Position numbers and translations under genes: made by a program
The notes under the pieces: generated by a model
The model's input: the letters and a program-made list of their open reading frames with translations, nothing else
Told to the model about the DNA's origin: nothing
The model's database searches: none
Virus record (IMG/VR): IMGVR_UViG_3300035703_000006
Coordinates: 62,001-126,000 of that record
Reading direction: 5' to 3' (one strand)
Length of the DNA stretch: 64,000 nucleotides
Part shown: piece after piece, positions 38,333 through 54,656 of the stretch
Layout of the letters: each line of letters opens with the position of its first letter
Position numbering within the stretch: position 1 is the stretch's first letter

Positions 38333-39352
38333 ATGAAAAAAGTATTGGTCACTGGTGGTGCAGGATTTATTGCACATCATTTGATTTCTCAAATTATTAA
38401 AAACACTGATTGGGAAATTATTAGTTTAGATCGTCTTGATTTTAGTGGAAATTTAAATCGTCTTCATGATGTTCTTAAAGACTTTTCTGTTGAAGAAAAA
38501 TCAAGAGTGAAAGTTGTATTTCATGATTTAAAAGCAGCAATTAATCCACTCATTGCTGCTGATATTGGTAAAGTTGATTATATTTTGCATCTTGCTGCAG
38601 GTTCTCATGTAGATAGAAGTATAGAATATCCACTTGAATTTGTGATGGATAATGTTGTGGCAACATGCAATATTCTTGATTTTGCTAGAAGTCTTGATAA
38701 TCTTGAAAGATTTGTTTATTTTAGTACGGATGAAGTTTTTGGACCTGCTCCAAAAGGAATTAATTATCAAGAAAATGATAGATACAATTCAACAAATCCT
38801 TATAGTGCAACAAAAGCAGGTGGGGAAGAACTTGCAGTAGCATTTGAAAACACATATGGATTGCCTGTGTATATTACTCATACGATGAATGTCTTTGGGC
38901 AAAGACAGCATCCAGAAAAATACATTCCGATGTGCATTAAAAAAATTCGTGATGGAGAAACTATTACAATTCATAGTGATCCAAGTAAAACTATTCCTGG
39001 ATCAAGGCATTATATTCATGCAGAAGATGTCGCTGATGCTCTTTTGTTCCTTTTAAATCGACCTACAATTACTGAAAAAAATTGGGGAGATGCTAAATGC
39101 CCTAAATTTAATATTGTTGGAGCAGAGGAATTAAATAATCTTCAACTTGCACAAATAATTGCTGATGTTCAAGGAAGGGAATTGAAATACGAAATGATCG
39201 ATTTTCATTCTGCACGTCCTGGACACGATCTTCGTTATGCTTTGTCTGGTGAAAAAATGAAGCAAATAGGGTGGGTTCCTAAAGATATACGTGATAGAAT
39301 CCGTGAGGTTGTTGAATGGACTCTTGCAAATGAACGTTGGATTAAACTATGA
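38333..39352 (+). CDS. NDP-sugar 4,6-dehydratase (RmlB/RfbB-like SDR)
   Basis: [32 protein letters not shown] and [10 protein letters not shown] motifs. Confidence 0.88.
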
Positions 39353-40350
39353 AAATCGCACTCATCACTGGAATTACTGGGCAAGATGGTTCCTATCTTG
39401 CGGAATTACTTTTGGAAAAAAGATATGAAGTTCATGGTATTATTCGGAGGTCTTCTCTTATTAATACTCATAGAATTGATCATATTTACAACCGCATTAA
39501 ATTACATTATGGTGACCTCACCGACTCTACTAACTTAGTAAGAGTAATTCAGCAGGTACAACCTGATGAAATTTATAATCTTGGTGCCCAAAGTCATGTG
39601 AAAGTGTCTTTTGAGATGCCTGAATATACAGGTATGGTTGATGGTTTAGGGACTTTACGTGTTCTTGAGGCAGTGCGTCTCTTGGGTATGGAGAATAAAG
39701 TTCGCATCTATCAAGCATCAACTTCTGAAATGTTTGGTTTGGTTCAAGAAATACCCCAAAAGGAAACTACTCCATTTTACCCTCGTAGTCCTTACGGATG
39801 TGCAAAGGTTTATGGTTACTGGGTGACTAAAAACTATCGTGAGGCATATGGAATGTATGCTTGTACTGGAATTCTTTTTAATCACGAATCCCCTCGTCGT
39901 GGTGAAACCTTTGTCACTAGGAAAATAACTCGTGGACTCTCTCGTATTTCAGTTGGTATGCAAGATTGTTTGTATCTTGGAAATCTAAATGCAAAAAGAG
40001 ATTGGGGTCATGCTAAAGATTTTGTGAGGGCAATGTGGATGATGCTTCAGCAAGATAATCCAGAAGATTATGTAATTGCTACTGGAAAACAATATTCTGT
40101 AAAAGAATTTGTAAATGCTGCTGGACCTTATTTTGGACTTCATATAAATTGGGAAGGTGAAGGATTGGATGAAGTTGGAATTGAAAAATTTAGTGGAAGA
40201 CCAATCATTAAAGTTGATTCAAAATACTTTAGACCAACAGAAGTAGAAACTTTACTTGGTGATGCATCAAAAGCAAAAAACGAATTAGGTTGGGAACCAG
40301 AGATTTCTTTTGATCAATTAGTTGAGGATATGTGTATTCATGGACAATAA
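39349..40350 (+). CDS. gmd: GDP-mannose 4,6-dehydratase
   Basis: [48 protein letters not shown] and RDWGHAKD motifs. Confidence 0.97.
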
Positions 40351-41260
40351 TTCTAAAGTATTGGTTGCTGGTGCCAATGGAATGGTTGGATCAGCAATCG
40401 TGAGAAACCTTGAAAGTAAAGGGTACACCAATATCATTAAAGGAACCCGTGATGATGTTGACTTCACGAATCAAGATGAAACGGAAAGATATTTCTATTC
40501 AGAAGAACCTGAGTATGTCTTTGTTGCTGCTGCTAAGGTTGGTGGCATTATGGCAAACAATAACTATAAGGCAGATTTTTTGACTGAGAATCTTCAAATT
40601 CAAACTAATTTGATTCAACAATCTTATAATTATGGAGTAAAGAAACTTTTGTTCCTAGGTTCTTCCTGCATCTATCCTAAGTTTGCAACTCAACCAATCA
40701 TGGAAGATCAATTGATGACTGGTTCTTTAGAACCAACTAATGATGCTTATGCGATTGCTAAGATTGCTGGTATTATGATGTGCCAAGCATATCGTCAGCA
40801 GCACGGGTTTAATGCCATCTCACTGATGCCTACGAATCTTTATGGTCCTAATGATAACTTTGATTTAGAGACCTCACACGTCCTTCCTGCAATGATTGCG
40901 AAGTTTCATAATGCCAAAGAATCTGTAACCCTTTGGGGTGATGGTTCTGCGATGCGTGAGTTTCTTCACGTCGATGATTTAGCAGAAGCATGTTATGTTT
41001 GTATGCAGAACTATGATGGACCAGGGCATATTAATGTTGGTACAGGTGAAGATGTTAGAATTTGGGAACTTGCAAATATTATTGCCGATGTCGTTGGTTA
41101 TGATCGTGATATTAACTGGGATTTTACTAAACCAAATGGAACTCCTAGAAAAGTTCTTAATGTAGATAAAATTAAGTCTTTTGGATGGGAACCAAAAATA
41201 ACTCTTAAAGAAGGAATTAAAAGTACTTATCAATGGTATGTTGAAAATGTTGTCTCATAA
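40340..41260 (+). CDS. fcl: GDP-L-fucose synthase
   Basis: [49 protein letters not shown] and REFLHVDD motifs. Confidence 0.96.
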
Positions 41261-42047
41261 TTTTCCAAACATTTATTGTGCGAGTTTAAAAGAAAGCACT
41301 GAAAGACAAGAAAACATAAGAAAACAATTTTTAGAAAATAATATTGAGTCATTTCAATTTCTTTTATCGGAAAGATTTGAAAATACTAATGATATAATTG
41401 AAGGTGAAAAGACTTTTTATCTTGATGATGGAACAAAGGGAGCAGTAACCTCACATCTAAGAATGATTAAGCATTGGTACTACAATACTAATGAACCTTA
41501 TGGATTTTTCTGTGAAGATGATTTAAGTTTAGAAACAATTAAATGTTGGAATTTTACTTGGGATGAATTTGTTAAAAATTTACCAAAAGATTGGGATTGT
41601 ATTCAATTAATGTGTGCAAGTGAAAATGCTGGTGACATAAGACTTAGAAAAAGAAACTGGGATGATTTTTCTGTTGGTGCTTATATCTTGACAAGAAAAT
41701 TTGCAAAAGTGTTAATTGACACTTTTATTAAAGATAATAAATTTTTACTTGAGTTTCCAGATAATCCAGATTGGGTTCCTTTGGCAGAACATTTGATTTA
41801 TTATACTCCTAAAAGTGTTATAGATAGTGTAGAATTGCAATATAATGTTTTTGTACTTCCTTTATTTGTAGAAGAAATAAAATTTAATACTACATTTTTT
41901 GATAGAAAATCAAAATATTGGGGAGAAGATACTGGAGTATATCAAGAAACTCACAAAGGACATCATATTGATTCTTACCATAAAGTTTTAAATTGGTGGA
42001 AAACAACTGGTAAAAATTTAACCATTCAAGAAATTATGAATTTATGA
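41238..42047 (+). CDS. Glycosyltransferase family 25-like
   Basis: GAVTSHLRMIK, CEDD, WDCIQL and GAYILTR motifs. Confidence 0.75.
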   Translation: MLKMLSHNFPNIYCASLKESTERQENIRKQFLENNIESFQFLLSERFENTNDIIEGEKTFYLDDGTKGAVTSHLRMIKHWYYNTNEPYGFFCEDDLSLETIKCWNFTWDEFVKNLPKDWDCIQLMCASENAGDIRLRKRNWDDFSVGAYILTRKFAKVLIDTFIKDNKFLLEFPDNPDWVPLAEHLIYYTPKSVIDSVELQYNVFVLPLFVEEIKFNTTFFDRKSKYWGEDTGVYQETHKGHHIDSYHKVLNWWKTTGKNLTIQEIMNL

Positions 42048-42709
42048 AATTTTTAACATTTTTAAATAGTGGGTGTATTGAAATATGTAAAAATATGTTG
42101 AAGTCTGCTGAAAATGTAGACATTAATATGGACGATTTTTATATTGCTTGTTTGGATGAGAATTCTTATCAACATTTTAAGCAATATAAAAATTCTTTTT
42201 TGCATATTGATCAACCCATTCTGGAATATCAAGATTGGACCTTTGATGAAAATAGTGGTTTTCGTCAAATTGTAAAAAATAAATGGAAAATTATTCAAAA
42301 AATTTATCAAGAACACAAACAATTATGTTGGGTTGACACTGACATTGTTTTTGTTCAAAACCCTGTAGAATCTATATCTGGACACCAAGAAGTTTTGTTT
42401 CAAGGTGATTCCCCTGGATCTACTTTGTGTTCTGGGTTTATGGTTTTTAATGACACAAAAGAGTGTGAAGATATCGTAAATGAATGTGCTTTGATTTCAA
42501 ATGCTGATGATCAATTAGTTATTAATGAGATAGCATTAAAAAAATATTCAACTTCTATTGCAATTTTAAATCGTGACTTGTTTCCAAATGGATATGCATA
42601 TTATACTGAGGGTAAGAAAGAAAATGCTTTAATTGTTCATAATAATTGGATGGTTGGTGTTGATACTAAAATTCAAAAATTTAAGGAGGAAAACTTATGG
42701 TACTTATGA
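42044..42709 (+). CDS. Nucleotide-diphospho-sugar transferase (GT77-like)
   Basis: DTD, CSGF, DDQ, LFPNG and HNNW motifs. Confidence 0.75.
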   Translation: MKFLTFLNSGCIEICKNMLKSAENVDINMDDFYIACLDENSYQHFKQYKNSFLHIDQPILEYQDWTFDENSGFRQIVKNKWKIIQKIYQEHKQLCWVDTDIVFVQNPVESISGHQEVLFQGDSPGSTLCSGFMVFNDTKECEDIVNECALISNADDQLVINEIALKKYSTSIAILNRDLFPNGYAYYTEGKKENALIVHNNWMVGVDTKIQKFKEENLWYL

Positions 42710-43566
42710 AGAATGATGCATTGAGACCTGCATCAATATCTCCAACTTATCCTCCATATCATACTGGAGAGTATCTAGAAGAATATTTTTTTAGAAGATG
42801 GAATGAAGAAAATATTCAAACAAATAGAGAATATATTGATGTTTTTTGGACAAATAATTTTTGCAATGCAACTTTTGCTGGACAAACATATCAAAATATT
42901 CAAGAAGAATTAAACAATACACTTTTGCCCAATGGAAAATATTTTACAGTTTCCCAATTTGATGATGGACCTTTTGAAAAATTTCCAGAAGATACTTTGA
43001 TTTTTTCTGCAGGTGGCAATCGGGAAGGGAAAAATATTATTCCGATTCCTTTAATTTGTAGTCCAATTCCAAAAGATTTAATTGAACAAAAAGAAAAAAC
43101 TATTTTTTGTTCATTTGTTGGGTCTAGAAATACTCATCACATTCGTATGGATATGTGTAAGTATCTTTCAGATAAAGAAGGATATGAAATATCTGCAGGA
43201 AACTGGTCTACTGAAGTCCCTATGGATAATCTTAAAAGATTTGTTGACATAACTTGCTCAAGTAAATTTGCACTTGCTCCAAGGGGATATGGAAAGCAAA
43301 GTTTTAGAATGTATGAAATTCTTCAACTTGGGGCAGTTCCTGTTTATGTTTCTGATGAACATTATCTTCCTTGGATGGATGAATTGGATTGGAATGAGTT
43401 TTGTGTTCCTATCAATGAAGATGAAATTGAAGAAATTGATATTATATTAAAATCTATTTCTGATGTAGAATATAATAAATTGTTGGAGAATGGAAAAAAA
43501 GTTTATCAAGAGTACTTTACTCTTGAAGGTATGTTTGAAAACATTGTGAAGAGGATTTTAAAATGA
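42697..43566 (+). CDS. Exostosin-like (GT47) glycosyltransferase
   Basis: SKFALAPRGYG..SFRMYE....GAVPV..SDEHYLP. Confidence 0.8.
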   Translation: MVLMKNDALRPASISPTYPPYHTGEYLEEYFFRRWNEENIQTNREYIDVFWTNNFCNATFAGQTYQNIQEELNNTLLPNGKYFTVSQFDDGPFEKFPEDTLIFSAGGNREGKNIIPIPLICSPIPKDLIEQKEKTIFCSFVGSRNTHHIRMDMCKYLSDKEGYEISAGNWSTEVPMDNLKRFVDITCSSKFALAPRGYGKQSFRMYEILQLGAVPVYVSDEHYLPWMDELDWNEFCVPINEDEIEEIDIILKSISDVEYNKLLENGKKVYQEYFTLEGMFENIVKRILK

Positions 43567-44336
43567 AATATTTTATGGTAATAGCTTCTTATCCGGATTG
43601 GAGGCAAGATTTTTTCAATGAAAATATGTCTCCAAGAAATAAAGAGTATTGTAAACTTCATGATTTTGAATACATAGAAATTACAGAAAAACTTGAACCA
43701 ATAAGAGGTAGAGTTGGTTGGATTAAAGCATTTAAAGTACAAGAATTGTTAAAAACAACTTTAAAAGATGGTGATGTTTTAACGTGTCTTGATGCCGATA
43801 TGGCAATTGTAAAAAAAGAAATTTTATATGCTCCTGATGAAAATAAATCTTTTGCTTATGCAATTGATTCTGGAAATACTCATTGTATGGGTTCTTATTC
43901 TCTCCGTGCAAATGATTGGAGTAGAAAATTATTTGATCTAATTGTTGATGAAAACAGATATAATTTTCTCAATGATCAAATGACAATTCATGAAAGATTT
44001 GGAACATATAGTAGTTTTTGGAAAGAATTTTATGATCAAGCATCTTGGTATTCTTTGGCTGGAATTAAAAGACATTCTGACAAATCTTTTTGGGAATATT
44101 CTGATTATGGATGGCATTCGGATAAAACAGCAACCGGTAAAGTCAATGAATGGTGCGAATATACATTAGAAGAATTACATGAGAATGTTCAAATTTTTCC
44201 AACGTCTTGGAACGTCACAGAACTTGAAGGGGAATCCTCTTGTGAATTCCTAATAAATAAAACACCAAGAGAAGATGTGATTATTCGTCATTTTGCTGGT
44301 GGACAACAATGGAGAAAGGAGTGGTTTAACCAATGA
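43563..44336 (+). CDS. Glycosyltransferase (GT34/MNN10-like GT-A)
   Basis: GWIKA, LDADMAI DxD, DQ and RHFAGG motifs. Confidence 0.6.
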   Translation: MKYFMVIASYPDWRQDFFNENMSPRNKEYCKLHDFEYIEITEKLEPIRGRVGWIKAFKVQELLKTTLKDGDVLTCLDADMAIVKKEILYAPDENKSFAYAIDSGNTHCMGSYSLRANDWSRKLFDLIVDENRYNFLNDQMTIHERFGTYSSFWKEFYDQASWYSLAGIKRHSDKSFWEYSDYGWHSDKTATGKVNEWCEYTLEELHENVQIFPTSWNVTELEGESSCEFLINKTPREDVIIRHFAGGQQWRKEWFNQ

Positions 44337-44956
44337 AAAAAGTTTTTTTGGATTGTGGTACTAATCTTGGACAAGGATTTTTGCAATTTTTAGATAAAAA
44401 GATAATAGATGAGACTTTTGAAATTCATTGTTTTGAACCAAATCCTCATGCCTTAGAATTTTCAAAAAAAAGATTTTCTGAAAAAGAATACGAAAAATAT
44501 AAAATAAATTATCATGAAGTTGCTTTATGGATTGAAGAATGTACTAAAGTATTGACTTTGGAATCATTTGATGGTGAATATTATGATCAACATACCGGTC
44601 AATATCTTGGAAGTGATTTAAAATCTGGTGGAGCTACAAATATTATGGGAGATCTTTGGGAAAAACCACAATGGATAAAGGACGAATGGTTATTCAAAGA
44701 TATTGAAGTTAATTGTATTAATTTTTCTAATTTTTTGAAAAAAAATATTAGTGAAAATGATTATGTAATTTGTAAAATGGATATTGAAGGATCTGAGTAT
44801 GAAGTTCTTGGAAAAATGATAGACGATGGTACGATTGATTTAATCAATGAAATTTATATTGAGTGGCATAATCATATGTTAAAGGAAAACTATAATGATC
44901 AAATTTTTATTGATGAAATGAAAAAAAGAAATATTAAGGTTGGTGATTGGATTTGA
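44333..44956 (+). CDS. FkbM-family methyltransferase
   Basis: LDCGTNLG, FEPNP, KMDIEGSEY and EWH motifs. Confidence 0.85.
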   Translation: MKKVFLDCGTNLGQGFLQFLDKKIIDETFEIHCFEPNPHALEFSKKRFSEKEYEKYKINYHEVALWIEECTKVLTLESFDGEYYDQHTGQYLGSDLKSGGATNIMGDLWEKPQWIKDEWLFKDIEVNCINFSNFLKKNISENDYVICKMDIEGSEYEVLGKMIDDGTIDLINEIYIEWHNHMLKENYNDQIFIDEMKKRNIKVGDWI

Positions 44957-45579
44957 TTATGAAAACGTTTATATGTCATTGGAAAAAGTTAAAAGAAAGA
45001 AAAAAATATATTTTAGAAGTTTTAGAAGAAGAAAAAATTTTTGATTATGAGTTTGTAACAGATTTTGACACTAATGATTGGGATATTGATGCTATTAAAT
45101 TAGAATATCCAAATATATTTGGGAATAATCCTTGTGGAAGAAAATTAAAATATTCCGAAATCTCATTATCCCTTAAGCACATTAAAATTATAAAAGATAT
45201 ATTTTTAAATTATGATTATGCTCTAATATTGGAAGATGATGTTATTCTTTGTGATGATTTTAAGGAAGAATTTGAAAAATCTTTTTCTCAGTTACCAAAT
45301 GATTGGGATTTAGCTTGGGTTGGTACATGTTGCAATTTACATGCTCCAATTGTTGGGCAACAAAGGGTATATAAAATGAATGGATCAAGATGTACTCATG
45401 CTTATATTATGAGCAAGAAATGTGCTTCCAAAATATTAGAAGAATTGAAATATTGTAATGATGGAGCAGATTTTTATTATAATTATTTAATAGAAAAATT
45501 TAATTTAAATAACTATTGGTTTGAACCTTCACTAGCAATTCAAAATCCTAATTACAAGACTACAATTCAAAATAATTAA
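44947..45579 (+). CDS. Glycosyltransferase family 25-like
   Basis: SLSLKH, ALILEDDV and CTHAYIMSK motifs. Confidence 0.8.
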   Translation: MDLIMKTFICHWKKLKERKKYILEVLEEEKIFDYEFVTDFDTNDWDIDAIKLEYPNIFGNNPCGRKLKYSEISLSLKHIKIIKDIFLNYDYALILEDDVILCDDFKEEFEKSFSQLPNDWDLAWVGTCCNLHAPIVGQQRVYKMNGSRCTHAYIMSKKCASKILEELKYCNDGADFYYNYLIEKFNLNNYWFEPSLAIQNPNYKTTIQNN

Positions 45580-45580
45580 T

Positions 45581-46435: not shown

Positions 46436-46446
46436 GGAGAATTGAA

Positions 46447-46989: not shown

Positions 46990-46999
46990 ATTTAAAATT

Positions 47000-47824: not shown

Positions 47825-48714
47825 AATTTTTAATGTTAACCAAACCAGATCATGGTGAATATCTCTCTGACATGGTTTTGCACGCTTTTAGATTTTCGGA
47901 GCATGAAATAATTGACTATCCTAGATCTTGGTATATGTATAAAGAGGATCTAAATAAAGATAATTTTGATCCTGTTGGTAAAGTTTCTGGAAATGGATTT
48001 ACATTATTTGGTACTTTACCTAAAGACAATTCGGTGGATCGAGATGATATTGAAAATAAAATTATAAATTCTTATTTTGATTATATTATTTTCCAGAGAT
48101 GTGATTTTAGTTATGATTTGGAAGAACTAGTTTTTGAATATTATTCAAATGATAAAATAATTTTACTAGATGGTCATGATGTTGATTATTTGTTTACTAA
48201 TAGAATAAATAAAGGAATTTATTTTAAAAGAGAATATACTTCATATTCCGATAAAGTATATCCAATTTCTTTTGCTTTTCCTAAGGAAAAAATAAATTTA
48301 TATTCCGAGGAAAAAACAAAGAATATTTCGGATATCATTCCAGGGCAAACTACTTTAGGCACTTACAAATATTTGACTGAAGAAAGTTATTATAGAGAAT
48401 ATTTACAAAGTAATTTTGCCTTAACTATGAAAAAATCTGGTTGGGATTGTATGAGGCATTATGAAATTATAGCTAATAAATGTATTCCTATTTTTCAAAA
48501 TATTGAGTATTGTCCAACTGAAACAATGAAAACACTTCCAAAAGATTTATTTTTCAAAGTTAATTGTTATATCAATGAAAAAGGAGTGGAATGGTTTTCT
48601 GAAAATCAGATTTATGAAGAAATGAATAATCAAATATTTAATCATTTTGTTGATAAATGCACAACCGAAAAACTATCTGAGTATATTTTAAATGTTATTG
48701 GAGAAATAAAATGA
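47821..48714 (+). CDS. Putative glycosyltransferase (GT-B-like)
   Basis: Y...SNFALT.KKSGWDCMRHYEI.A..CIP C-terminal motif. Confidence 0.55.
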   Translation: MKFLMLTKPDHGEYLSDMVLHAFRFSEHEIIDYPRSWYMYKEDLNKDNFDPVGKVSGNGFTLFGTLPKDNSVDRDDIENKIINSYFDYIIFQRCDFSYDLEELVFEYYSNDKIILLDGHDVDYLFTNRINKGIYFKREYTSYSDKVYPISFAFPKEKINLYSEEKTKNISDIIPGQTTLGTYKYLTEESYYREYLQSNFALTMKKSGWDCMRHYEIIANKCIPIFQNIEYCPTETMKTLPKDLFFKVNCYINEKGVEWFSENQIYEEMNNQIFNHFVDKCTTEKLSEYILNVIGEIK

Positions 48715-49562
48715 TTAGTGTTTCACTTTATGGAAGATTGGGAAATCATTTATTTCAATATGCCGTTTGTAGGACAATAGCAGAAACTAATTCATATGAG
48801 TATCATATACCTAGAAATTTTCTTGGAATTTTTTTTGGATGTAATTTGGGTGTTGAAAACGATAATACTAATAAAGTATATCCAAAATTAAATAATCATG
48901 ATGCAATTCAGAGATATGATGAAAAAATGATGAGTATTGCAGATGGAACTAAACTTGAAGGATATTTTCAAACGGAAAAATACTTTTTGCACAATAGAGA
49001 AAATATTTTAAAGTGGTTTTATGTTCCTGATAATCCTTCATTGATGCAAGAACTTGAAATTGATGACAATACTTGTGTGTTGAATATTAGGGGAAATGAA
49101 TATAAGAATATAAAAGATGTTTTTCTAAACATTGATTTTTGGAAACATTCTATGGATTATATGAAAAAAATAAATCCAAATATAAAGTTTTTAATTGTTA
49201 CTGATGATTTAGAATTATCTAGAAATTGGTTCCCAGATATTAAAGTTTATCATGGTGGAACAGTAAATGATTTTACTTTAATTAATAAAGCAAAATATTT
49301 AATCATTGCAAACTCTACTTTTTCTTGGTGGGCTGCATGGTTAAATGAAAATGCAAATCTTATAATAGCACCAAAATACTGGTTTAGATATAATGTTAGT
49401 GAATCTTTTTGGTCACCAGGGGATGCAATAACAAAAAAATTTAGTTACATGGATAGAAGTGGAAGTCTTCAAACTAGTGAAGAATGCGAAAAAGAAATTA
49501 CAGAAAAAAATTATGAAGATCTTGCTGAATATTTAATTAGTATTGGATGTGAAGTAGCATGA
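48711..49562 (+). CDS. Alpha-1,2-fucosyltransferase (GT11)
   Basis: GRLGNHLFQYA, GYFQ, (H/N)IRG and IIANSTFSWWAAWL motifs. Confidence 0.88.
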   Translation: MISVSLYGRLGNHLFQYAVCRTIAETNSYEYHIPRNFLGIFFGCNLGVENDNTNKVYPKLNNHDAIQRYDEKMMSIADGTKLEGYFQTEKYFLHNRENILKWFYVPDNPSLMQELEIDDNTCVLNIRGNEYKNIKDVFLNIDFWKHSMDYMKKINPNIKFLIVTDDLELSRNWFPDIKVYHGGTVNDFTLINKAKYLIIANSTFSWWAAWLNENANLIIAPKYWFRYNVSESFWSPGDAITKKFSYMDRSGSLQTSEECEKEITEKNYEDLAEYLISIGCEVA

Positions 49563-50179: not shown

Positions 50180-50182
50180 TTT

Positions 50183-50713
50183 ATGAAAGTTGGTAAAGGT
50201 ACGTATGGACATGAAAATATTTCAATTAACAAAAGTCCAGAAACAAATTATGATTTATATATTGGTAATTTTTGTTCCATTGGTACTAATTTGAGTGTTT
50301 ATCTTGGGGGTCATCATAATTATAAATGGATGACTACATATCCATTTGGATTAAAATATGATCATTTAAAATCTGTAAATGGTGTAGGTTGTGTTTATCA
50401 TAATGGTGATGTTATAATTGAAAATGATGTTTGGATTGGGATTAATTGTACTGTAATGTCGGGAGTAACAATATCAAATGGTGCAGTTGTTGCTGCAAAT
50501 TCTCATGTAGTAAAGGATGTTGAACCATATTCTATTGTTGGTGGAAATCCAGCAAAACATATTAAATATAGATTTAATAAAAATATTATCAATAAATTGT
50601 TAGAAATAAAGTGGTGGAATCTTGATGATGAGAATTTAAATAAACTTTTGCCAATACTTTGTTCTGACAATTATGACGAACTTTTAAAAATAGATTCAAA
50701 TTATTTGATATAA
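50183..50713 (+). CDS. Hexapeptide-repeat O-acetyltransferase (Vat/CatB-like)
   Basis: IGNFCSIG, IENDVWIG, GAVVAANS.V.KDV.PYSIVGGNPA and WW motifs. Confidence 0.88.
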   Translation: MKVGKGTYGHENISINKSPETNYDLYIGNFCSIGTNLSVYLGGHHNYKWMTTYPFGLKYDHLKSVNGVGCVYHNGDVIIENDVWIGINCTVMSGVTISNGAVVAANSHVVKDVEPYSIVGGNPAKHIKYRFNKNIINKLLEIKWWNLDDENLNKLLPILCSDNYDELLKIDSNYLI

Positions 50714-50724
50714 AGGAGATTAAA

Positions 50725-51261
50725 ATGATTGATGAAAAATGCTCTGGTTATGGTATAGTCGATTTAGTTAAAAAACTAAATCAACAAAATATAATTGGAC
50801 TTGAAATAGGATGTGCTGAAGGAAATACAACAAAACATCTATTGTCAAATATTTCAAATTTAAAGTTATATGGAATTGATCCGTATACTGAATATATTGA
50901 TTGGAATGGTTATGATTTAAATAGTGATCATATGGATAGAACTACTAAAAAATTTGAAGAAAATATTAAAGATTACAAAAATAGACACCATCTATATAAA
51001 AATTTTTCCGATGATGTAGTTGACAAATTTGAAAATAATAGTTTGGACTTTATTTTTATTGATGGTCTTCATACTTATGAACAAGTATTAAAAGATTGTA
51101 GAAATTATTATTCTAAAGTTAAAAGTGGGGGAATATTCTCTGGACATGATTATACTGCAATTGAAGCAGTTAATAGAGCAGTAGTTGAATTTGCTACTGA
51201 GGTTGAAATTCCAGAAATTTTTGATGTAGAAGTTGATGTTTGGTATTGGATTAAACCGTGA
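50725..51261 (+). CDS. Class I SAM methyltransferase (Methyltransf_24-like)
   Basis: LEIG, GIDP, FIFIDGLHTYE and GGIFSGHDY motifs. Confidence 0.85.
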   Translation: MIDEKCSGYGIVDLVKKLNQQNIIGLEIGCAEGNTTKHLLSNISNLKLYGIDPYTEYIDWNGYDLNSDHMDRTTKKFEENIKDYKNRHHLYKNFSDDVVDKFENNSLDFIFIDGLHTYEQVLKDCRNYYSKVKSGGIFSGHDYTAIEAVNRAVVEFATEVEIPEIFDVEVDVWYWIKP

Positions 51262-52205
51262 AAATAGCATTTCATGATAATTGTCTTTCAATAAGAGGAA
51301 CTACTGTTGCAATTTTTGATTACGCATATTGGACTAGAAAATATTTAAATATTGAACCTATTATTGTTTATAATAAGAATCTTTCTACTAATGATTTACA
51401 TGGATTCAATAAATGTTCTTCTGAATTTTCTGTTTTTAATTACGAAAGTTTTGATGAAGTTGACACTATTTTATTAAATCAAAAATGTGATGCTTTTTTT
51501 GCAATAAAAGGAGGAAAGTATGATGGAGTTATATCAAATGAAGTGAAAAATTTTATTTGCGCTGTTTCAAGTAATTGCACAAAAAACGACATTCATGGTA
51601 ATGTTTTTGCTATGGGATCAGATTGGTTGTCCAAAATTACTGGGATACCTTCTGTTCCTCATGTAGTTTACCTTCCTAATCATGATTTTGATATGAGAGA
51701 TGAACTTGGAATACCAAGAGAATCGTTAGTTTTTGGAAGAAACGGTGGATGGGAAACATTTGATATACCTTTTGTGAAACAATCAATCATGGAAGTTTTA
51801 GATAAAAGAAAAGATATATGGTTTCTTTTTCAATACACTGAACCATTTTATTATCATGAAAGAATAATATACCTTGATCCAAATTATGATTTAAATGAAA
51901 AGGTAAAATTTATAAACACTTGTGATGCAATGATACACGCAAGATACATTGGAGAATCATTTGGTTTATCGTGTGCGGAATTTTCTATCAAAAACAAACC
52001 AGTAATAACTTGGTATAATTCTCCAGAAAGAAATCATATAGATACTTTAGGAGAAAAGGGAATTTATTACAAAGATAAAGCAGATATTGATCATATACTT
52101 TACAATATTGATAAATTTGAAATAAATCAATTGGAATGGAATTGCTATCAAAATTATTCTCCAGAAAAAGTAGTTCAAAAATTTAAAGAAGTTTATTTAG
52201 ATTGA
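51258..52205 (+). CDS. GT-B (GT4-like) glycosyltransferase
   Basis: RGTTVAIFDYA and CDAMIHAR..GESFGLSCAEF...KPVI motifs. Confidence 0.78.
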   Translation: MKIAFHDNCLSIRGTTVAIFDYAYWTRKYLNIEPIIVYNKNLSTNDLHGFNKCSSEFSVFNYESFDEVDTILLNQKCDAFFAIKGGKYDGVISNEVKNFICAVSSNCTKNDIHGNVFAMGSDWLSKITGIPSVPHVVYLPNHDFDMRDELGIPRESLVFGRNGGWETFDIPFVKQSIMEVLDKRKDIWFLFQYTEPFYYHERIIYLDPNYDLNEKVKFINTCDAMIHARYIGESFGLSCAEFSIKNKPVITWYNSPERNHIDTLGEKGIYYKDKADIDHILYNIDKFEINQLEWNCYQNYSPEKVVQKFKEVYLD

Positions 52206-52206
52206 T

Positions 52207-53100
52207 ATGAAATCATTAGTAACTGGTGGTGCCGGATTTATTGGATCGCACATTGTAGATAAATTATTAGAATTAGGTCATGAAGTCATTGTGGTTGACA
52301 ATGAATTTTCTGACGTTCATGAACAATTCTATTGGAATCAAAAAGCAAAAAATTATAAATATGATATTCGTGATTATGAAAATACAAGACCTCTTTATGA
52401 GGGGGTTGATTATGTTTTCCATACTGCAGCAGAAGCAAGGATACAACCAGCAATTTTGAATCCTATTGAAGCAGTTAGCATTAATTGTGTTGGCACTGCT
52501 ACGGTTCTTCAATGTGCTCGTGAAGCGGGAGTTAAAAAAGTTATGTATTCATCAACTTCTTCTGGATATGGATTAAACGAACCACCTAATCATGAGAATC
52601 AACCAGACGATTGCTTAAACCCTTATTCTGTATCTAAAGTTGCAGGGGAAAAACTTTGTAAAATGTATACAAAGTTGTTTGGATTAAAAACAGTAGTTTT
52701 TAGGTACTTTAATGTTTATGGTGAAAGACAGCCACTTAGAGGTCAATATGCTCCAGTAGTCGGTATTTTTCTTCGTCAACGTGCCTCTGATGAACCTCTA
52801 ACCATTGTTGGTGATGGTGAACAAAGAAGAGATTTCACTCACGTATCTGATATTGTTCAAGCAAATATTCTTGCCGCAACTAAAGATGTTGAAGATAAGT
52901 TCTATGGTGGTACTTATAATGTCGGATGTGGTGTAAATTATTCTATTAATGAAATTGCTGATATTATTTCTGATAATCAAATACATATACCACCTAGAAT
53001 CGGGGAATCTAGAATTACTCTTGCTAATAATGGAAAATTAAGAACTATTTTTGGGTGGAGGTCACAAGTTAATTTAATGGATTGGATTAAAACGCAATGA
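52207..53100 (+). CDS. NAD-dependent nucleotide-sugar epimerase/dehydratase
   Basis: TGGAGFIGSH, SSTSS.YG, YSVSK, RYFNVYG and GDGEQRRDF motifs. Confidence 0.9.
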   Translation: MKSLVTGGAGFIGSHIVDKLLELGHEVIVVDNEFSDVHEQFYWNQKAKNYKYDIRDYENTRPLYEGVDYVFHTAAEARIQPAILNPIEAVSINCVGTATVLQCAREAGVKKVMYSSTSSGYGLNEPPNHENQPDDCLNPYSVSKVAGEKLCKMYTKLFGLKTVVFRYFNVYGERQPLRGQYAPVVGIFLRQRASDEPLTIVGDGEQRRDFTHVSDIVQANILAATKDVEDKFYGGTYNVGCGVNYSINEIADIISDNQIHIPPRIGESRITLANNGKLRTIFGWRSQVNLMDWIKTQ

Positions 53101-53798
53101 ATTTATTAATAGAATATTTCAGATCTGATGATTATCAAAGACATAGTGAATATTTAACTTGCATTCACGAAAATTTAGAAAATCAATATATTAAAAAAAT
53201 ATATGTTTTTATTTCTGATGACTCTAAATTAAATTTTGAATCGGAAAAAATAGAAATAATTAAAAGAGAAGAGAGACCAACATATAAAGATCTTTTTCAA
53301 TTTTGTAATGAAAATTTAAAAGACGAAATTTGTATTATTTCAAATGCAGATATTATTCTTGATGAAACACTCTATCATGTTCAAAATGCAAATTTAGATA
53401 ATGTTTTTGTTGCATTAACTAGATGGGAAGTATTTTGTGAAAATCGTGAATGGTGTATTGCACCATTTAATAATTCATCTTCTCAAGATGTTTGGATGTT
53501 CAAAACACCAATCATTACAAATGATGAAATGAAATTTACTTTAGGGAAACCAGGTTGCGATAATAAAATTGCTAAAATTATGGCAGATATTAATTATGAG
53601 GTTAGAAATCCTGCAAATCAAATTGTAGCATCACATTTTCATATTTCTGGGCATCGAACTTATGATTGGAAAGATGATAGAGTCCCTGGTCCTTATCTTT
53701 GTTTAGTTCCAAATGATGACATAAATCAAAAAACAGAGTATATTGAAATTGATGGATTTGATGCACAAGGAAGAGCATATAGGATAGAAAAACAATGA
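53097..53798 (+). CDS. Hypothetical GT-A-like glycan-island protein
   Basis: ISNADI (DxD-like), ALTRWE, SQDVW and GKPGCDN motifs. Confidence 0.6.
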   Translation: MNLLIEYFRSDDYQRHSEYLTCIHENLENQYIKKIYVFISDDSKLNFESEKIEIIKREERPTYKDLFQFCNENLKDEICIISNADIILDETLYHVQNANLDNVFVALTRWEVFCENREWCIAPFNNSSSQDVWMFKTPIITNDEMKFTLGKPGCDNKIAKIMADINYEVRNPANQIVASHFHISGHRTYDWKDDRVPGPYLCLVPNDDINQKTEYIEIDGFDAQGRAYRIEKQ

Positions 53799-54595
53799 AA
53801 GTAGGAATTATTGGAAATGGATTTGTTGGTAATGCAATTTATCAAAACATAAAAGATAAAATTGAAAACTTGTTTGTATTTGATGTTGATGAAAACAAAA
53901 GTATTAGTTCATATGATGATACAATCAGATCAGATATAGTTTTTGTATGTCTCCCTACACCAATGAAAGATAAAATGGGGGGAGAATGTAATTTGGCTTA
54001 TATTGATAATTTTTTTAATTCTCTTCCAGAAAATCTTGATGGTATTTTTGTTATTAAATCTACTATTCCGATTGGCACAACAAAAAAACTCTCAGATAAA
54101 AGAAAAGACTTAAAAATAATTCATAATCCAGAATTTTTAACTGCACGAAATTCTGTTGAAGATTTTAATAATGCTGATAGAAATATTATTGGTGGAGAGA
54201 AAGAATCATCTAAAAAATTAGAATTTTTTTATTCTCAATATTTTCCGCACATCTCTACTTTTTTAGTTTCTTCTGATGAATCTGAAGCAATAAAATATTT
54301 TTCCAATACATATCTTTCTGTTAAGGTTGCTTATTTTAATTTAATGTATGATCTTTGCGAGAAAATCGGAATCAATTTTGAGAATGTTAGAAATTGTGTT
54401 TCTTTAGATAAACGAATAGGTGAATCTCATACTTTTGTTCCTGGTATAGATGGTGATCGTGGGTTTGGTGGAACTTGTTTTCCTAAAGATTTAAATGCAC
54501 TTAATGATACTTTTAAACAGCATAATTTAAATAAATCTATTTTAGAAGAAATTTGGAAATATAATATGCAAATACGAAATGTTATTGATTGGTGA
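53795..54595 (+). CDS. UDP-glucose/GDP-mannose dehydrogenase family protein (short form)
   Basis: GNGFVG, KST.P.GT, NPEFL, K...N, and GFGGTCFPKD catalytic motif. Confidence 0.85.
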   Translation: MKVGIIGNGFVGNAIYQNIKDKIENLFVFDVDENKSISSYDDTIRSDIVFVCLPTPMKDKMGGECNLAYIDNFFNSLPENLDGIFVIKSTIPIGTTKKLSDKRKDLKIIHNPEFLTARNSVEDFNNADRNIIGGEKESSKKLEFFYSQYFPHISTFLVSSDESEAIKYFSNTYLSVKVAYFNLMYDLCEKIGINFENVRNCVSLDKRIGESHTFVPGIDGDRGFGGTCFPKDLNALNDTFKQHNLNKSILEEIWKYNMQIRNVIDW

Positions 54596-54619: not shown

Positions 54620-54656
54620 GGGGTGCTTGACACCCCTTTCTTTTTGCTATATAGTT
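54620..54656 (+). promoter_or_regulatory. Hairpin GGGGTG/CACCCC overlapping TTGACA, with a -10-like TATAGT
   Basis: TTGACA at 54627-54632; TATAGT at 54651-54656; T run after the stem. Confidence 0.65.

What the first reader, a model, noticed from the sequence alone, without database searches (positions are those of the whole stretch)
38333..54595. 16-kb self-contained glycan factory: GDP-fucose synthesis, both fucosyltransferase families, and tailoring enzymes
About 19 tightly coupled genes: gmd and fcl (GDP-L-fucose), an RmlB-like dehydratase, an epimerase, a UDP-sugar dehydrogenase, GT10 and GT11 fucosyltransferases, two GT25, GT47, GT77-like, GT34-like, GT4-like, HtrL-like, three methyltransferases and an O-acetyltransferase. 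Donor synthesis, chain assembly and methyl/acetyl decoration together resemble the autonomous glycosylation of chloroviruses and giant viruses more than scattered AMGs. No flippase, polymerase or base-modifying enzyme is visible, which favours a cytoplasmic acceptor such as virion proteins (inference).
Basis: partly seen in the sequence, partly recalled or inferred. Interest (0 to 1): 0.7.

Follow-up and report, generated by a model that had tools for sequence, protein, structure and literature searches.

The report
Cyanophage fucose-glycan gene island
This is a real 16-kb operon of 21 sugar-building genes in a T4-like virus of picocyanobacteria, a large mosaic example of the "LPS gene clusters" known in such phages since 2005, and what it glycosylates has still never been tested.

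Summary
Window 38333-54595 carries 21 head-to-tail + strand genes:
- five nucleotide-sugar enzymes (Gmd, Fcl, an RmlB-like dehydratase, a UDP-hexose 4-epimerase-like SDR, a short UGDH-like protein);
- up to twelve glycosyltransferase-like proteins (GT10, GT11-like, 2x GT25, GT47, GT77-like, GT34-like, WlaTC/HtrL, GT4-like, three unclassified);
- three methyltransferases and one hexapeptide acetyltransferase.

The window comes from a 247-kb T4-like cyanomyovirus.

- The island is not self-contained. The whole genome lacks a sugar nucleotidyltransferase, a priming transferase, a flippase, a polymerase or ligase, and an ABC exporter.
- A missing flippase does not point to virion proteins, because LOS-type glycans are also built by soluble enzymes and exported by housekeeping host machinery.
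- Syntenic clusters are already described in P-SSM2, S-SKS1, S-SCSM1 and S-SCSM2R.

Across related viral contigs a conserved scaffold (gmd-fcl ... GT25-GT10 ... GT4-like, epimerase, g20) flanks a variable slot. Here that slot holds six genes and overlaps the lowest-GC stretch of the genome.

My best reading is early-expressed remodelling of the infected cell's surface glycan (about 0.45). Virion glycosylation is the main rival (about 0.27). I class it as a new member of a known kind, of moderate interest.

The parts
37420..37447 (+). Sigma-70-like promoter candidate (TTGACA, 16 nt, TAGTAT) in the only intergenic gap upstream of the island
   Evidence: 10 of 12 matches. It follows the terminator at 37067-37093. 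In 12 of 14 related loci a strong site, mostly TTGACT-17-TATAAT, lies 0.2-1.5 kb (mostly 0.3-1.0 kb) upstream of gmd, against a background of 0.62 such sites per 1.5 kb. Function is inferred.
37474..38321 (+). Six small overlapping ORFs (29-67 aa) linking the promoter to the first enzyme gene; three have one hydrophobic segment each
   Evidence: Translations and hydropathy (ORFs 37623-37826, 37932-38021 and 38199-38321 reach KD 2.1-2.3). No family assigned. P-SSM2 and S-SKS1 also have small ORFs in front of gmd.
38333..39352 (+). g01, RmlB-like NDP-glucose 4,6-dehydratase (SDR)
   Evidence: TIGR01181 at 241 bits, below the cut-off of 365. PDB dTDP-glucose 4,6-dehydratases at 1e-50. Among the fetched related loci it is found only in the identical fragment L004.
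39349..40350 (+). g02, GDP-mannose 4,6-dehydratase (Gmd)
   Evidence: TIGR01472 at 566 bits, above the cut-off of 415. 80% identical to S-SKS1 and 73% to P-SSM2.
40322..41260 (+). g03, GDP-L-fucose synthase (Fcl/GMER)
   Evidence: NF047922 at 455 bits, against a cut-off of 500. 64-68% identical to the S-SKS1 and P-SSM2 homologues.
41238..42047 (+). g04, GT25-like glycosyltransferase (marginal)
   Evidence: PF01755 at 26.2 bits against a cut-off of 24, N-terminal part only. 26% identical to the last gene of the P-SSM2 island.
42044..42709 (+). g05, nucleotide-diphospho-sugar transferase (PF03407, GT77-type)
   Evidence: PF03407 at 48 bits. DxD motif at residue 98. Present in 9 related loci, always next to g06.
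42697..43566 (+). g06, exostosin-type GT47 glycosyltransferase
   Evidence: PF03016 at 71.8 bits and RXYLT1_C at 31.8 bits.
43563..44336 (+). g07, GT34-like GT-A protein (a lead, not a family hit)
   Evidence: No Pfam match. Atlas feature score 0.97 to Glyco_transf_34 clusters. DxD motif at residue 77. Present in 12 related loci.
44333..44956 (+). g08, FkbM-family methyltransferase
   Evidence: PF05050 at 49.5 bits and TIGR01444 at 50.6 bits.
44947..45579 (+). g09, GT25 glycosyltransferase (LOS beta-1,4-galactosyltransferase family)
   Evidence: PF01755 at 54.2 bits. Lies directly upstream of the GT10 gene here and in seven other related loci.
45581..46435 (+). g10, GT10 alpha-1,3/4-fucosyltransferase
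   Evidence: FucT_N at 87 bits and Glyco_transf_10 at 56 bits. H. pylori FucT structures at 1e-21, with the TGEN and ENS..GY.TEK motifs kept and no C-terminal heptads or anchor. 67% identical to S-SKS1.
46447..46989 (+). g11, class I SAM-dependent O-methyltransferase fold with no Pfam family
   Evidence: AlphaFold2 pLDDT 90. Foldseek matches COMT- and CCoAOMT-type methyltransferases at TM 0.6-0.69, probability 1.0.
47000..47824 (+). g12, WlaTC/HtrL (YibB) family glycosyltransferase-like protein
   Evidence: PF09612 at 115 bits. NCBI names homologues 'WlaTC/HtrL family glycosyltransferase'. Found in only one of the fetched related loci (L027); in GenBank phages only two Campylobacter phages match.
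47821..48714 (+). g13, unclassified GT-B-like protein
   Evidence: No Pfam match. Its Atlas model (pTM 0.89) matches a Glyco_trans_1_2 cluster at TM 0.80, and RXYLT1_C/GT47-like clusters.
48711..49562 (+). g14, GT11-like transferase with a variant donor motif
   Evidence: PF01531 at 46 bits. The canonical H-x-R-R-x-D motif reads N-I-R-G-N-E, as in picocyanobacterial genomic homologues (30-37% identity) and unlike other phage GT11s.
49559..50179 (+). g15, GT-A-fold protein of an undescribed family
   Evidence: No Pfam match. 446 cluster representatives, some fused to GT2, GT4, Methyltransf_24 or RmlD-like domains. pLDDT 96; nearest folds are GT8 glycogenin and GT6 ABO transferases at TM about 0.5.
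50183..50713 (+). g16, hexapeptide-repeat acetyltransferase (xenobiotic-acetyltransferase class)
   Evidence: Hexapep at 28 bits. CatB/Vat-type models at 1e-41, below their cut-offs. Whether it O- or N-acetylates was not determined.
50725..51261 (+). g17, Methyltransf_24 (TylF/CmcI-like sugar O-methyltransferase type)
   Evidence: PF13578 at 69 bits.
51258..52205 (+). g18, GT4-like GT-B protein
   Evidence: Glycos_transf_1 at 19 bits, below the cut-off. An invariant E-x7-E motif (E233, E241) across 12 homologues, and a weak profile hit to the chlorovirus GT4 protein B736L at E 0.04. Present in 18 related loci.
52207..53100 (+). g19, UDP-hexose 4-epimerase-like SDR, the anchor gene of the island
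   Evidence: PF01370 at 194 bits. Nearest PDB entries are GalE, WbgU and WbpP. 525 loci in IMG/VR.
53097..53798 (+). g20, phage-specific putative GT-A glycosyltransferase
   Evidence: No Pfam match. Atlas places it in virus-only 'putative glycosyltransferase' clusters whose models resemble GT2 at TM about 0.6. It follows g19 in 25 loci.
53795..54595 (+). g21, short two-domain UDP-glucose-dehydrogenase-like protein
   Evidence: PF03721 plus PF00984 but no PF03720. The catalytic-Cys motif is kept. The same 266-aa form recurs at 80% identity in L010 and L011, and the 120 best database hits are all 261-280 aa.
54620..54636 (+). Terminator-like hairpin followed by a T-run, closing the unit
   Evidence: It overlaps the next sigma-70-like promoter at 54627-54655, which precedes the hli and ferredoxin genes.

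Best explanation
The island is one long, probably early, transcription unit of a T4-like cyanomyovirus. It makes a complex, probably non-repeating, fucose-containing oligosaccharide capped with methyl and acetyl groups.

Donor supply: Gmd and Fcl turn host GDP-mannose into GDP-L-fucose. The RmlB-like, epimerase-like and UGDH-like enzymes diversify host UDP/dTDP-hexoses.

Assembly: about a dozen soluble glycosyltransferases each add one sugar. They include a conserved GT25-GT10 pair, by inference a beta-galactosyl step followed by alpha-1,3/4-fucosylation, as in Lewis-type LPS. Three methyltransferases and an acetyltransferase finish the glycan.

Acceptor: the phage encodes no priming enzyme and no export machinery. 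The most likely acceptor is therefore a host lipid-linked envelope glycan (LPS/LOS core or another outer-membrane glycoconjugate), extended at the cytoplasmic face and carried out by the host's own housekeeping systems. This would change the surface of the infected cell during the hours-long latent period. The likely benefit is blocking further phage adsorption, either superinfection by competitors or loss of progeny.

Shown: gene content, operon layout, synteny and mosaicism. Inferred: timing, sugar order, acceptor and benefit.
For: - Enzyme identities.
- Transcription unit: tight or overlapping junctions, a single upstream sigma-70-like promoter, flanking terminators, and no T4-late motif in front of the island. 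A comparable promoter lies upstream of gmd in 12 of 14 related loci.
- Missing machinery: no Wzx, Wzy/WaaL, Bac_transf, WecA-type, ABC2 or NTP_transferase family in the 247-kb genome, although controls matched in 10-14 of 14 reference genomes.
- Family context: GT25 and WlaTC/HtrL are LOS/LPS-core families, and GT25 + GT10 + GT11 is the enzyme set H. pylori uses for Lewis antigens on LPS (own knowledge of CAZy and the LPS literature).
- Host accessory genomes hold the same families: GT10 in 15 and GT11 in 21 of 301 sampled Cyanobiaceae genomes, sometimes a few kb apart. g14 shares its variant motif with host genes rather than with phage GT11s.
- Neighbourhood: a signal-peptide 'cyanophage outer membrane protein' (PF24653) lies directly upstream. 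pstS sits in the same neighbourhood in P-SSM2 and S-SKS1.
- O-antigen-like locus design: conserved flanks with a variable slot.
- Time available: the latent period of a related cyanomyovirus is about 8 h (PMC5082946).
- The same hypothesis was proposed for P-SSM2 (PMC1079782).
Against: - There is no experimental datum for any cyanophage cluster of this kind.
- Marine picocyanobacterial LPS is reported to be simple and rough (own knowledge), so the actual acceptor is unclear.
- Soluble GTs, virus-made GDP-fucose, several methyltransferases and early expression fit chlorovirus-type capsid glycosylation equally well (PMC5408694).
- A second glycan-related gene group elsewhere in the genome is interleaved with RCC1-repeat and tail-fibre-like genes. 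That hints at modification of virion proteins.
- The benefit of altering the surface of a cell that will lyse is only argued, not shown.
- The window's own promoter match is modest (10 of 12), and such sites are common in AT-rich DNA.
Confidence: 0.45

Rival explanations
1. Autonomous virion glycosylation. The soluble enzymes build the glycan directly on phage structural proteins (capsid, decoration, tail or fibre proteins) in the cytoplasm, as chloroviruses do on Vp54 and some mycobacteriophages do on capsid and tail-tube proteins. The result is a variable glycan coat on the particle.
For: - All 21 proteins lack hydrophobic segments.
- No priming or export genes exist in the genome.
- The repertoire overlaps the chlorovirus set (GMD, GMER, UGDH, a 4,6-dehydratase, an acetyltransferase, soluble early GTs; PMC5408694).
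- The GT34-like, GT47/RXYLT1-like and GT-plus-Methyltransf_24 families are shared between phage and giant-virus clusters in the Atlas.
- The weak best PDB hit of g18 is a chlorovirus GT4 protein.
- A second glycan-related group sits among RCC1-repeat and tail-fibre-like genes.
- A hypervariable cassette is what a surface coat under selection would show.
Against: - The island lies about 35 kb from the major head gene. It sits behind replication and nucleotide-metabolism genes, among host-like metabolic genes (hli, ferredoxin, peroxiredoxin, psbA), not in the structural module.
- It has a sigma-70-like rather than a late promoter.
- No report of glycosylated cyanophage virions was found.
- No oligosaccharyl- or protein-O-glycosyltransferase signature was identified.
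- The GT25 and WlaTC/HtrL families are typical of lipid-linked LOS.
Confidence: 0.27
2. The product is neither envelope LPS nor virion protein. It would be another glycoconjugate: a free or secreted oligo- or polysaccharide, a glycolipid, or glycosylation of host proteins (for example S-layer or motility glycoproteins). Its role would be to alter cell aggregation, grazing or sinking.
For: The acceptor is unidentified. The enzymes are soluble. Methylated deoxyhexose glycans occur on glycolipids and S-layer glycoproteins (own knowledge). Published discussions list grazer recognition and cell-cell interaction as possibilities (PMC9602691).
Against: There is no synthase-type processive GT, exporter or lipid-handling enzyme in the island. 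Twelve different single-step GTs argue for a defined oligosaccharide on a specific acceptor rather than a bulk polymer.
Confidence: 0.13
3. DNA hypermodification: the transferases glycosylate modified bases of the phage genome to evade restriction, as T-even phages do. One paper suggests this for cyanophage GTs (PMC12801897).
For: It is a T4-like phage. The genes would be expressed early. The GTs are soluble.
Against: No thymidylate-synthase/dCMP-hydroxymethylase-family enzyme exists in the genome. No member of the DNA glucosyltransferase families was detected. The families present (GT10, GT11, GT25, GT47, GT77, WlaTC) elongate glycans. GDP-fucose is not a known DNA-modification donor (own knowledge).
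Confidence: 0.03
4. Inert cargo or an assembly chimera: a recently captured low-GC block that is not functional in the phage.
For: The island overlaps the lowest-GC 5-kb stretch of the genome (25.0% against 34.1% overall). Four of its genes had no match of 40% identity or more in the 84 fetched loci.
Against: All 21 frames are intact with coupled junctions. Independent runs from another study reproduce the order with identical contigs. Catalytic motifs are kept. Homologues at 60-94% identity keep the same lengths.
Confidence: 0.02

Closest known systems
Synechococcus phage S-SKS1 (Llyrvirus) island SWZG_00055 to SWZG_00036
   Same: It has the same position, after the tRNA block and small ORFs and before hli and ferredoxin. 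It has the same scaffold in the same order: gmd, fcl, g05, g06, a GT25-like gene, GT10, then GT4-like g18, the epimerase and g20, at 53-80% amino-acid identity. It is the only GenBank phage that carries g18 and a close GT10.
   Different: S-SKS1 fills the variable slot with other genes, annotated as phosphoheptose isomerase, transaldolase and a DHBP-synthase-like protein. Its GT10 gene is split into two ORFs. It lacks g01, g04, g07, g08, g11-g17 and g21.
Prochlorococcus phage P-SSM2 'LPS gene' cluster PSSM2_257-271 (Sullivan et al. 2005, PMC1079782)
   Same: It is a T4-like cyanomyovirus with the same neighbourhood (pstS, small ORFs, then hli and ferredoxin). The island starts with gmd-fcl and ends with the same epimerase, and it includes GT11, a methyltransferase and a GT25-like gene. 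A TTGACT-17-TATAAT promoter lies upstream.
   Different: The P-SSM2 island has 15 genes with GT2, GT1 and 2OG-Fe(II) oxygenase members. It has no GT10, GT47, GT77, HtrL, g18 or g20. Its GT11 has the canonical HxRRxD motif.
'Cell wall synthesis and modification' gene sets of S-SCSM1 and S-SCSM2R (PMC9602691, PMC12801897)
   Same: These are large cyanomyoviruses with GDP-fucose synthesis plus many GTs. S-SCSM2R is reported with 13 GTs, including GT10, GT11 and GT25. The same untested host-surface hypothesis applies.
   Different: Those sets are partly dispersed and include Kds, PgaA, RmlC or NodZ-type genes that were not seen here.
Helicobacter pylori Lewis-antigen O-chain synthesis (GT25 galactosyltransferase, GT10 FutA/B, GT11 FutC)
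   Same: It uses the same three enzyme families. The GT10 catalytic motifs are conserved. The GT25-GT10 adjacency is conserved across phage loci. The enzymes work at the cytoplasmic face with no dedicated flippase in the locus (own knowledge).
   Different: The phage GT10 lacks the heptad repeats and C-terminal anchor. The GT11-like g14 has a variant donor motif. The acceptor and linkages are unknown. There is no evidence that a LacNAc unit is made.
Chlorovirus PBCV-1 autonomous capsid glycosylation (PMC5408694, PMC9614988)
   Same: The virus encodes GMD, GMER, UGDH, a 4,6-dehydratase and an acetyltransferase. Its GTs are soluble, early and include an exostosin-like enzyme. Its glycans are methylated, fucose-containing and non-repeating.
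   Different: The host is eukaryotic. The chlorovirus GT genes are scattered rather than in one operon, and the glycan on Vp54 has been shown experimentally. Here nothing shows a protein acceptor.
Mycobacteriophage virion glycosylation cassettes
   Same: The phage encodes GTs that act in the cytoplasm on its own structural proteins (own knowledge; the title 'virion glycosylation' is cited in 24 papers).
   Different: Those cassettes hold 2-4 genes placed within or next to the structural module (own knowledge). This island has 21 genes and sits far from the head and tail genes.
Temperate-phage O-antigen conversion modules (gtrABC, oac, P22, SfV and D3 types)
   Same: The phage changes the host surface glycan to block adsorption. 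This is the model invoked for P-SSM2 (PMC1079782).
   Different: Those modules have 1-3 genes with membrane proteins that act on the periplasmic side in lysogens (own knowledge). This island is a lytic-type phage operon of soluble cytoplasmic enzymes.

Membership tests
T4-like cyanomyovirus 'LPS / cell-wall glycan' island (P-SSM2 / S-SKS1 type) | Encoded by a T4-like cyanomyovirus | tested here: met
   The major head protein is 74-75% identical to S-B05, S-SCSM1, S-SKS1 and P-SSM2. T4-type scaffold, polymerase, helicase and RNR genes are present, and psbA, hli and petF lie in the window.
T4-like cyanomyovirus 'LPS / cell-wall glycan' island (P-SSM2 / S-SKS1 type) | Same genomic position and frame: small ORFs, then gmd-fcl at the 5' end, the epimerase at the 3' end, and hli plus ferredoxin downstream | tested here: met
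T4-like cyanomyovirus 'LPS / cell-wall glycan' island (P-SSM2 / S-SKS1 type) | Demonstrated effect on host LPS or cell wall | not testable with these tools
   No experiment exists for any member. The name is a hypothesis (PMC1079782).
Complete bacterial O-antigen / capsule locus (Wzx/Wzy- or ABC-dependent) | Priming phosphoglycosyl transferase (Bac_transf or WecA type) | tested here: not met
   PF02397 and PF00953 are absent from the 247-kb genome, while the controls matched.
Complete bacterial O-antigen / capsule locus (Wzx/Wzy- or ABC-dependent) | Flippase, polymerase or ligase, or an ABC exporter | tested here: not met
   PF01943, PF04932 and PF01061 are absent.
Complete bacterial O-antigen / capsule locus (Wzx/Wzy- or ABC-dependent) | Sugar-1-phosphate nucleotidyltransferase for donor activation | tested here: not met
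   PF00483 is absent. The 'cytidyltransferase' PHROG hit at 21702-22898 has no Pfam support.
GT10 alpha-1,3/4-fucosyltransferase | FucT N-terminal and GT10 catalytic domains, with the conserved acidic base motif and the ENS..GY.TEK donor motif | tested here: met
   Pfam scores of 87 and 56 bits. The alignment to H. pylori FucT shows both motifs.
GT11 alpha-1,2-fucosyltransferase | Family profile match | tested here: met
   PF01531 at 46 bits against a cut-off of 23.9.
GT11 alpha-1,2-fucosyltransferase | Canonical H-x-R-R-x-D GDP-fucose motif | tested here: not met
   g14 reads N-I-R-G-N-E. Three picocyanobacterial homologues share the variant, whereas five phage GT11s keep HxRRxD. Donor specificity is therefore open.
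UDP-glucose 6-dehydrogenase | Three-domain architecture including the C-terminal UDP-binding domain | tested here: not met
   Only PF03721 and PF00984 are present. PF03720 occurs nowhere in the genome. All PDB relatives are 393 aa or longer.
UDP-glucose 6-dehydrogenase | Catalytic cysteine motif (GG.C.PKD) | tested here: met
   Alignment to 4A7P. The motif is also conserved in L010 and L011.
Chlorovirus-type autonomous protein glycosylation | Virus-encoded nucleotide-sugar enzymes plus soluble GTs without signal peptide or TM segment | tested here: met
   Compared with PMC5408694.
Chlorovirus-type autonomous protein glycosylation | Virus-specified glycan attached to the capsid protein | not testable with these tools
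   This needs virion glycoproteomics.
Mycobacteriophage virion glycosylation cassette | GT genes embedded in or adjacent to the virion structural module | tested here: not met
   The major head gene is at 1829-3262 and the island begins at 38333. Replication, RNR and lysozyme genes lie in between.
T-even DNA glucosylation | Hydroxymethyl-pyrimidine synthesis (thymidylate-synthase-family hydroxymethylase) | tested here: not met
   PF00303 is absent from the genome.

The most novel reading that the evidence does not exclude
The island is a phage-autonomous, cytoplasmic protein-glycosylation system that coats the cyanophage particle with a strain-variable, fucosylated, methylated glycan. The swappable central cassette would then define virion 'glycotypes'. 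This would be a bacterial-virus counterpart of chlorovirus capsid glycosylation, carried by some of the most abundant viruses in lakes and oceans.
Probability: 0.25. Interest if true: 0.75.

Novelty: new member of a known kind. Interest (0 to 1): 0.4.

Why it matters
T4-like cyanophages kill a large share of the planet's picocyanobacteria, and surface glycans are what phages and grazers recognise. Some of these phages devote 6-7% of their genome to a glycan factory whose target has been guessed at since 2005 and never measured.

This window adds a clear picture of the locus design. There is a conserved scaffold (GDP-fucose genes, a GT25-GT10 pair, a GT4-like/epimerase/GT-A end) around a swappable slot, much like a bacterial O-antigen locus. 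The scaffold genes recur in tens of related viral contigs, and the epimerase anchor gene alone in 525 IMG/VR loci. That pattern implies diversifying selection on an exposed glycan.

It also points to S-SKS1 as the culturable model with the same scaffold. Finally, it flags three uncharacterised enzyme families: a short UGDH-like protein, the g15 GT-A fold family and the g20 family.

Tried and rejected
- A search for RNA runs holding the island listed none, so expression and timing could not be observed.
- The T4-late motif TATAAATA is not enriched in the window (12 found, 7.7 expected). Near the island it occurs only inside g19.
- A single-protein IMG/VR scan with GT10 returned only an identical fragment and one distant hit. 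The alignment-based scan with the epimerase was needed.
No donor lineage can be named.
- The HtrL-like g12 was not found in the 301 Cyanobiaceae genomes searched with this query.
- Sequence searches of the PDB gave nothing for g11, g12 and g15. The fold route was used for g11 and g15.
- I first read g21 as a truncated pseudogene and then rejected that. The same length recurs at 56-94% identity in the 120 best database hits.
- The PHROG 'cytidyltransferase' at 21702-22898 was checked as a possible sugar-activating enzyme. It has no Pfam support.
- DNA glycosylation was rejected. An assembly chimera was rejected.
- One genome search failed on a parameter and was repeated correctly.

Full report
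WHAT IS THERE

The window is bases 62001-126000 of a 247,112-bp IMG/VR virus record that CheckV rates complete. It is a T4-like cyanomyovirus:
- The head scaffold, major head protein, polymerase, helicases, SbcC-like nuclease and class I RNR genes match T4-type PHROGs.
- The major head protein is 74-75% identical to those of Synechococcus phages S-B05, S-SCSM1 and S-SKS1 and of Prochlorococcus phage P-SSM2.
- The window also carries hli, ferredoxin, a peroxiredoxin and psbA.
- Near-identical DNA occurs in subsurface, aquatic and freshwater metagenomes, so the host is probably a freshwater or estuarine picocyanobacterium. This is an inference.

Between 38333 and 54595 lie 21 + strand ORFs with junctions from -29 to +11 nt.

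GENE BY GENE

- g01 is an RmlB-like NDP-glucose 4,6-dehydratase.
- g02 is Gmd, above the equivalog cut-off. g03 is Fcl.
- g04 and g09 match GT25; g04 is marginal.
- g05 matches Nucleotid_trans (GT77 type). g06 matches GT47. g08 is an FkbM methyltransferase.
- g10 is GT10 with its FucT N-domain. It aligns to the H. pylori alpha-1,3-fucosyltransferase structures with both catalytic motifs kept, but without the heptad and anchor tail.
- g12 is a WlaTC/HtrL family protein.
- g14 matches GT11, g16 is a xenobiotic-class hexapeptide acetyltransferase and g17 is a Methyltransf_24 protein.
- g19 is an SDR closest to UDP-hexose 4-epimerases.

Five ORFs had no Pfam hit:
- g07 resembles GT34 clusters, by language-model features only.
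- g13 has a GT-B model close to Glyco_trans_1_2 proteins.
- g20 belongs to virus-only 'putative glycosyltransferase' clusters with GT2-like models.
- g11 folds as a COMT-like class I methyltransferase, with pLDDT 90 and TM 0.6-0.69.
- g15 folds as a GT-A domain nearest GT8 and GT6 enzymes, with pLDDT 96. Its family has 446 cluster representatives, some fused to GT2, GT4, methyltransferase or RmlD-like domains.

g18 is below the Pfam cut-off for GT1/GT4 but has an invariant E-x7-E motif.

The tally is five nucleotide-sugar enzymes, up to twelve GT-like proteins, three methyltransferases and one acetyltransferase. None has a hydrophobic segment in a Kyte-Doolittle scan.

TWO CORRECTIONS TO THE FAMILY LIST

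First, g21 is not a standard UDP-sugar dehydrogenase.
- It has the NAD-binding and central domains and the catalytic cysteine motif.
- It ends where the UDP-binding domain should begin. No such domain exists anywhere in the genome.
- It is not a broken gene. The same 266-aa form recurs at 80% identity in two other viral contigs, and the 120 best database hits are all 261-280 aa.

Second, g14 passes the GT11 profile but lacks the H-x-R-R-x-D motif. It reads N-I-R-G-N-E. It shares this variant and a C-terminal extension with genomic homologues from picocyanobacteria, whereas other cyanophage GT11s keep the canonical motif. Its donor is therefore uncertain, and it looks host-derived.

OPERON LAYOUT

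- A strong terminator (37067-37093) ends the preceding gene. That gene is a signal-peptide 'cyanophage outer membrane protein' (PF24653).
- A sigma-70-like site (37420-37447) sits in the only intergenic gap.
- Six small coupled ORFs follow; three of them are hydrophobic. Then come the 21 genes.
- A hairpin plus T-run at 54620-54636 closes the unit, and the next promoter overlaps it.
- No T4-late motif precedes the island.
- P-SSM2 has TTGACT-17-TATAAT and S-SKS1 has TTGCAT-16-TATAAT in the equivalent place.
- In 12 of 14 related loci a strong site lies within 1.5 kb upstream of gmd. Such sites are common in this AT-rich DNA, at 0.62 per 1.5 kb.

Early or middle transcription by host polymerase is therefore a reasonable inference, not a demonstration.

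NOT SELF-CONTAINED

Searches of the whole genome found none of the following, while the controls matched in 10-14 of 14 reference genomes:
- Wzx
- Wzy/WaaL
- Bac_transf or WecA-type priming enzymes
- ABC-2 permease
- sugar nucleotidyltransferase

The phage must therefore take GDP-mannose and UDP/dTDP-hexoses from the host. If the target is a surface glycan, it must also use a host primer and host export. There is no thymidylate-synthase-family hydroxymethylase, which together with the GT families present makes DNA glycosylation very unlikely.

ALREADY KNOWN AS A KIND

- Sullivan et al. (2005, PMC1079782) described 24 'LPS genes' in two clusters in P-SSM2. They proposed that these genes alter the host surface to prevent attachment of other phages.
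[quoted passage not shown] They share the same ends: gmd-fcl at the start and the g19 epimerase at the end.
- S-SKS1 shares nine genes in the same order at 53-80% identity. It is the only GenBank phage with g18 and a close GT10.

LOCUS DESIGN

The epimerase g19 has 525 loci in IMG/VR. I screened 84 loci in all: the best 80 of these, S-SKS1, P-SSM2 and two loci from the GT10 scan. At 40% identity or more:
- g19 is present in 82 loci, g20 in 25, fcl in 21, g18 in 18 and gmd in 16.
- GT10 is present in 13, g07 in 12, and g05, g06 and g09 in 9 each.
- g08 is present in 6, g11 in 3 and g21 in 2.
- g12 and g15 are each present in one locus.
- g13, g14, g16 and g17 are present in none.

The order is always colinear. 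The GT25-GT10 pair stays adjacent in seven other loci. The island is thus a conserved scaffold around a variable slot between GT10/g11 and g18. In this virus the slot holds g12-g17. The lowest-GC 5-kb stretch of the whole genome (25.0% against 34.1% overall) lies at window 45,001-50,000, across g09-g15, so it overlaps the slot.

The arrangement is real. A 100% identical 9-kb contig covers g01-g11. Identical contigs from another study tile 46200-52067.

The host family's accessory genomes hold the same enzyme families sporadically: GT10 in 15 and GT11 in 21 of 301 sampled Cyanobiaceae genomes, twice only a few kb apart.

HOW IT MOST LIKELY WORKS

Shown: the pathway logic.
- Gmd and Fcl supply GDP-L-fucose for GT10, and possibly for g14.
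- Many different single-domain GTs imply a defined, non-repeating oligosaccharide of roughly ten sugars.
- Methyl and acetyl transferases cap it.

Inferred from family knowledge:
- GT25 followed by GT10 suggests a galactose then fucose step, as in Lewis-type LPS.
- g21 with g19 might give a uronic acid.
- g01 yields a 6-deoxyhexose precursor whose finishing enzyme is not identified.

The acceptor is the open point. I favour the host envelope (0.45) for four reasons:
- GT25 and WlaTC/HtrL are LOS-core families.
- The missing primer and exporter are exactly what a host supplies.
- The neighbouring genes encode envelope or periplasm proteins.
- The locus looks like an O-antigen locus.

Soluble GTs, early expression and the GMD, GMER, UGDH, dehydratase and acetyltransferase set match chloroviruses (PMC5408694). 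A second glycan-related group in this genome lies among RCC1-repeat and tail-fibre-like genes. It comprises a g15 paralogue, a sulfotransferase, a GT2-methyltransferase fusion and a 2OG oxygenase. No report of glycosylated cyanophage virions was found.

VERDICT

This is a new, large, mosaic member of a known kind. Interest is moderate (0.4). The island itself is not surprising to cyanophage genomicists. However, the twenty-year-old question of what these islands glycosylate is experimentally approachable in S-SKS1, and a virion answer would be notable.

Noticed in passing
window 53795-54595 (g21); also L010 and L011 at 11595-12392: A family of short (261-280 aa) UDP-glucose-dehydrogenase-like proteins. 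They keep the NAD-binding and central domains and the catalytic Cys but have no UDP-binding C-terminal domain. The 120 best database hits (56-94% identity) are all this length. Whether they are active, and on what substrate, is unknown.
   Followed up: partly
own genome G000:C1 about 193,500-203,300 (locus L173 7495-17286), outside the window: A second glycan-related gene group interleaved with three RCC1-repeat proteins (one of 1159 aa) and a weak tail-fibre hit. It holds a TPR protein, a 2OG-Fe(II) oxygenase, a g15 paralogue, a sulfotransferase and a 510-aa GT2 plus Methyltransf_24 fusion. This could bear on modification of virion proteins.
   Followed up: partly
window 36677-37045: A 122-aa protein with a signal-peptide-like N-terminus matches PF24653 'Cyanophage outer membrane protein-like beta barrel' over its full length (95 bits). 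It lies between tRNA-Gly (36465-36535) and a strong terminator, just upstream of the island. P-SSM2 has two DUF680 genes in the equivalent neighbourhood.
   Followed up: partly
window 37474-38321: Six small translationally coupled ORFs (29-67 aa) lie between the promoter candidate and g01. Three have a single hydrophobic segment and none has a family match. They may be membrane partners of the soluble enzymes or unrelated early genes.
   Followed up: partly
window 49559-50179 (g15): A confidently modelled GT-A-fold protein with no Pfam family and no DxD motif. Its family has 446 representatives at 50% clustering and conserved K-x-S-G-R-Y and E-G-S motifs. Elsewhere it is fused to GT2, GT4, Gly_transf_sug, Methyltransf_24, RmlD-like and DUF6492 domains. 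It is a candidate for an undescribed glycosyltransferase family.
   Followed up: partly
L002 15001-15857 (S-SKS1, NC_020851): The GT10 fucosyltransferase of the cultured phage S-SKS1 matches in two pieces and is annotated as two ORFs (SWZG_00050 and SWZG_00049). The gene is probably frameshifted there, while it is intact in this window.
   Followed up: no
window 48711-49562 (g14), compared with L170-L172: The GT11-like gene groups with picocyanobacterial chromosomal homologues (variant N-x-R-G-x-E motif and a shared C-terminal extension) rather than with other cyanophage GT11s. This suggests a separate, host-derived acquisition into the variable slot.
   Followed up: partly
window 44000-52000: Near-identical sequence is held by runs labelled subsurface, aquatic and freshwater metagenome, not marine. 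This relative of the marine phage S-SKS1 therefore appears to be a freshwater or groundwater-connected lineage.
   Followed up: no
window 35761-36423, 56348-57019, 57106-57786: Three envelope-active genes flank the island: a phage tail lysozyme domain protein, a Peptidase_C39-like cysteine protease and a phage lysozyme. A peroxiredoxin lies at 55548-56093.
   Followed up: no
window 21702-22898: A 399-aa protein matches the PHROG 'cytidyltransferase' families strongly (1e-77) but has no Pfam hit at E 0.001. Its function is unclear, and it is not evidence for sugar activation.
   Followed up: partly
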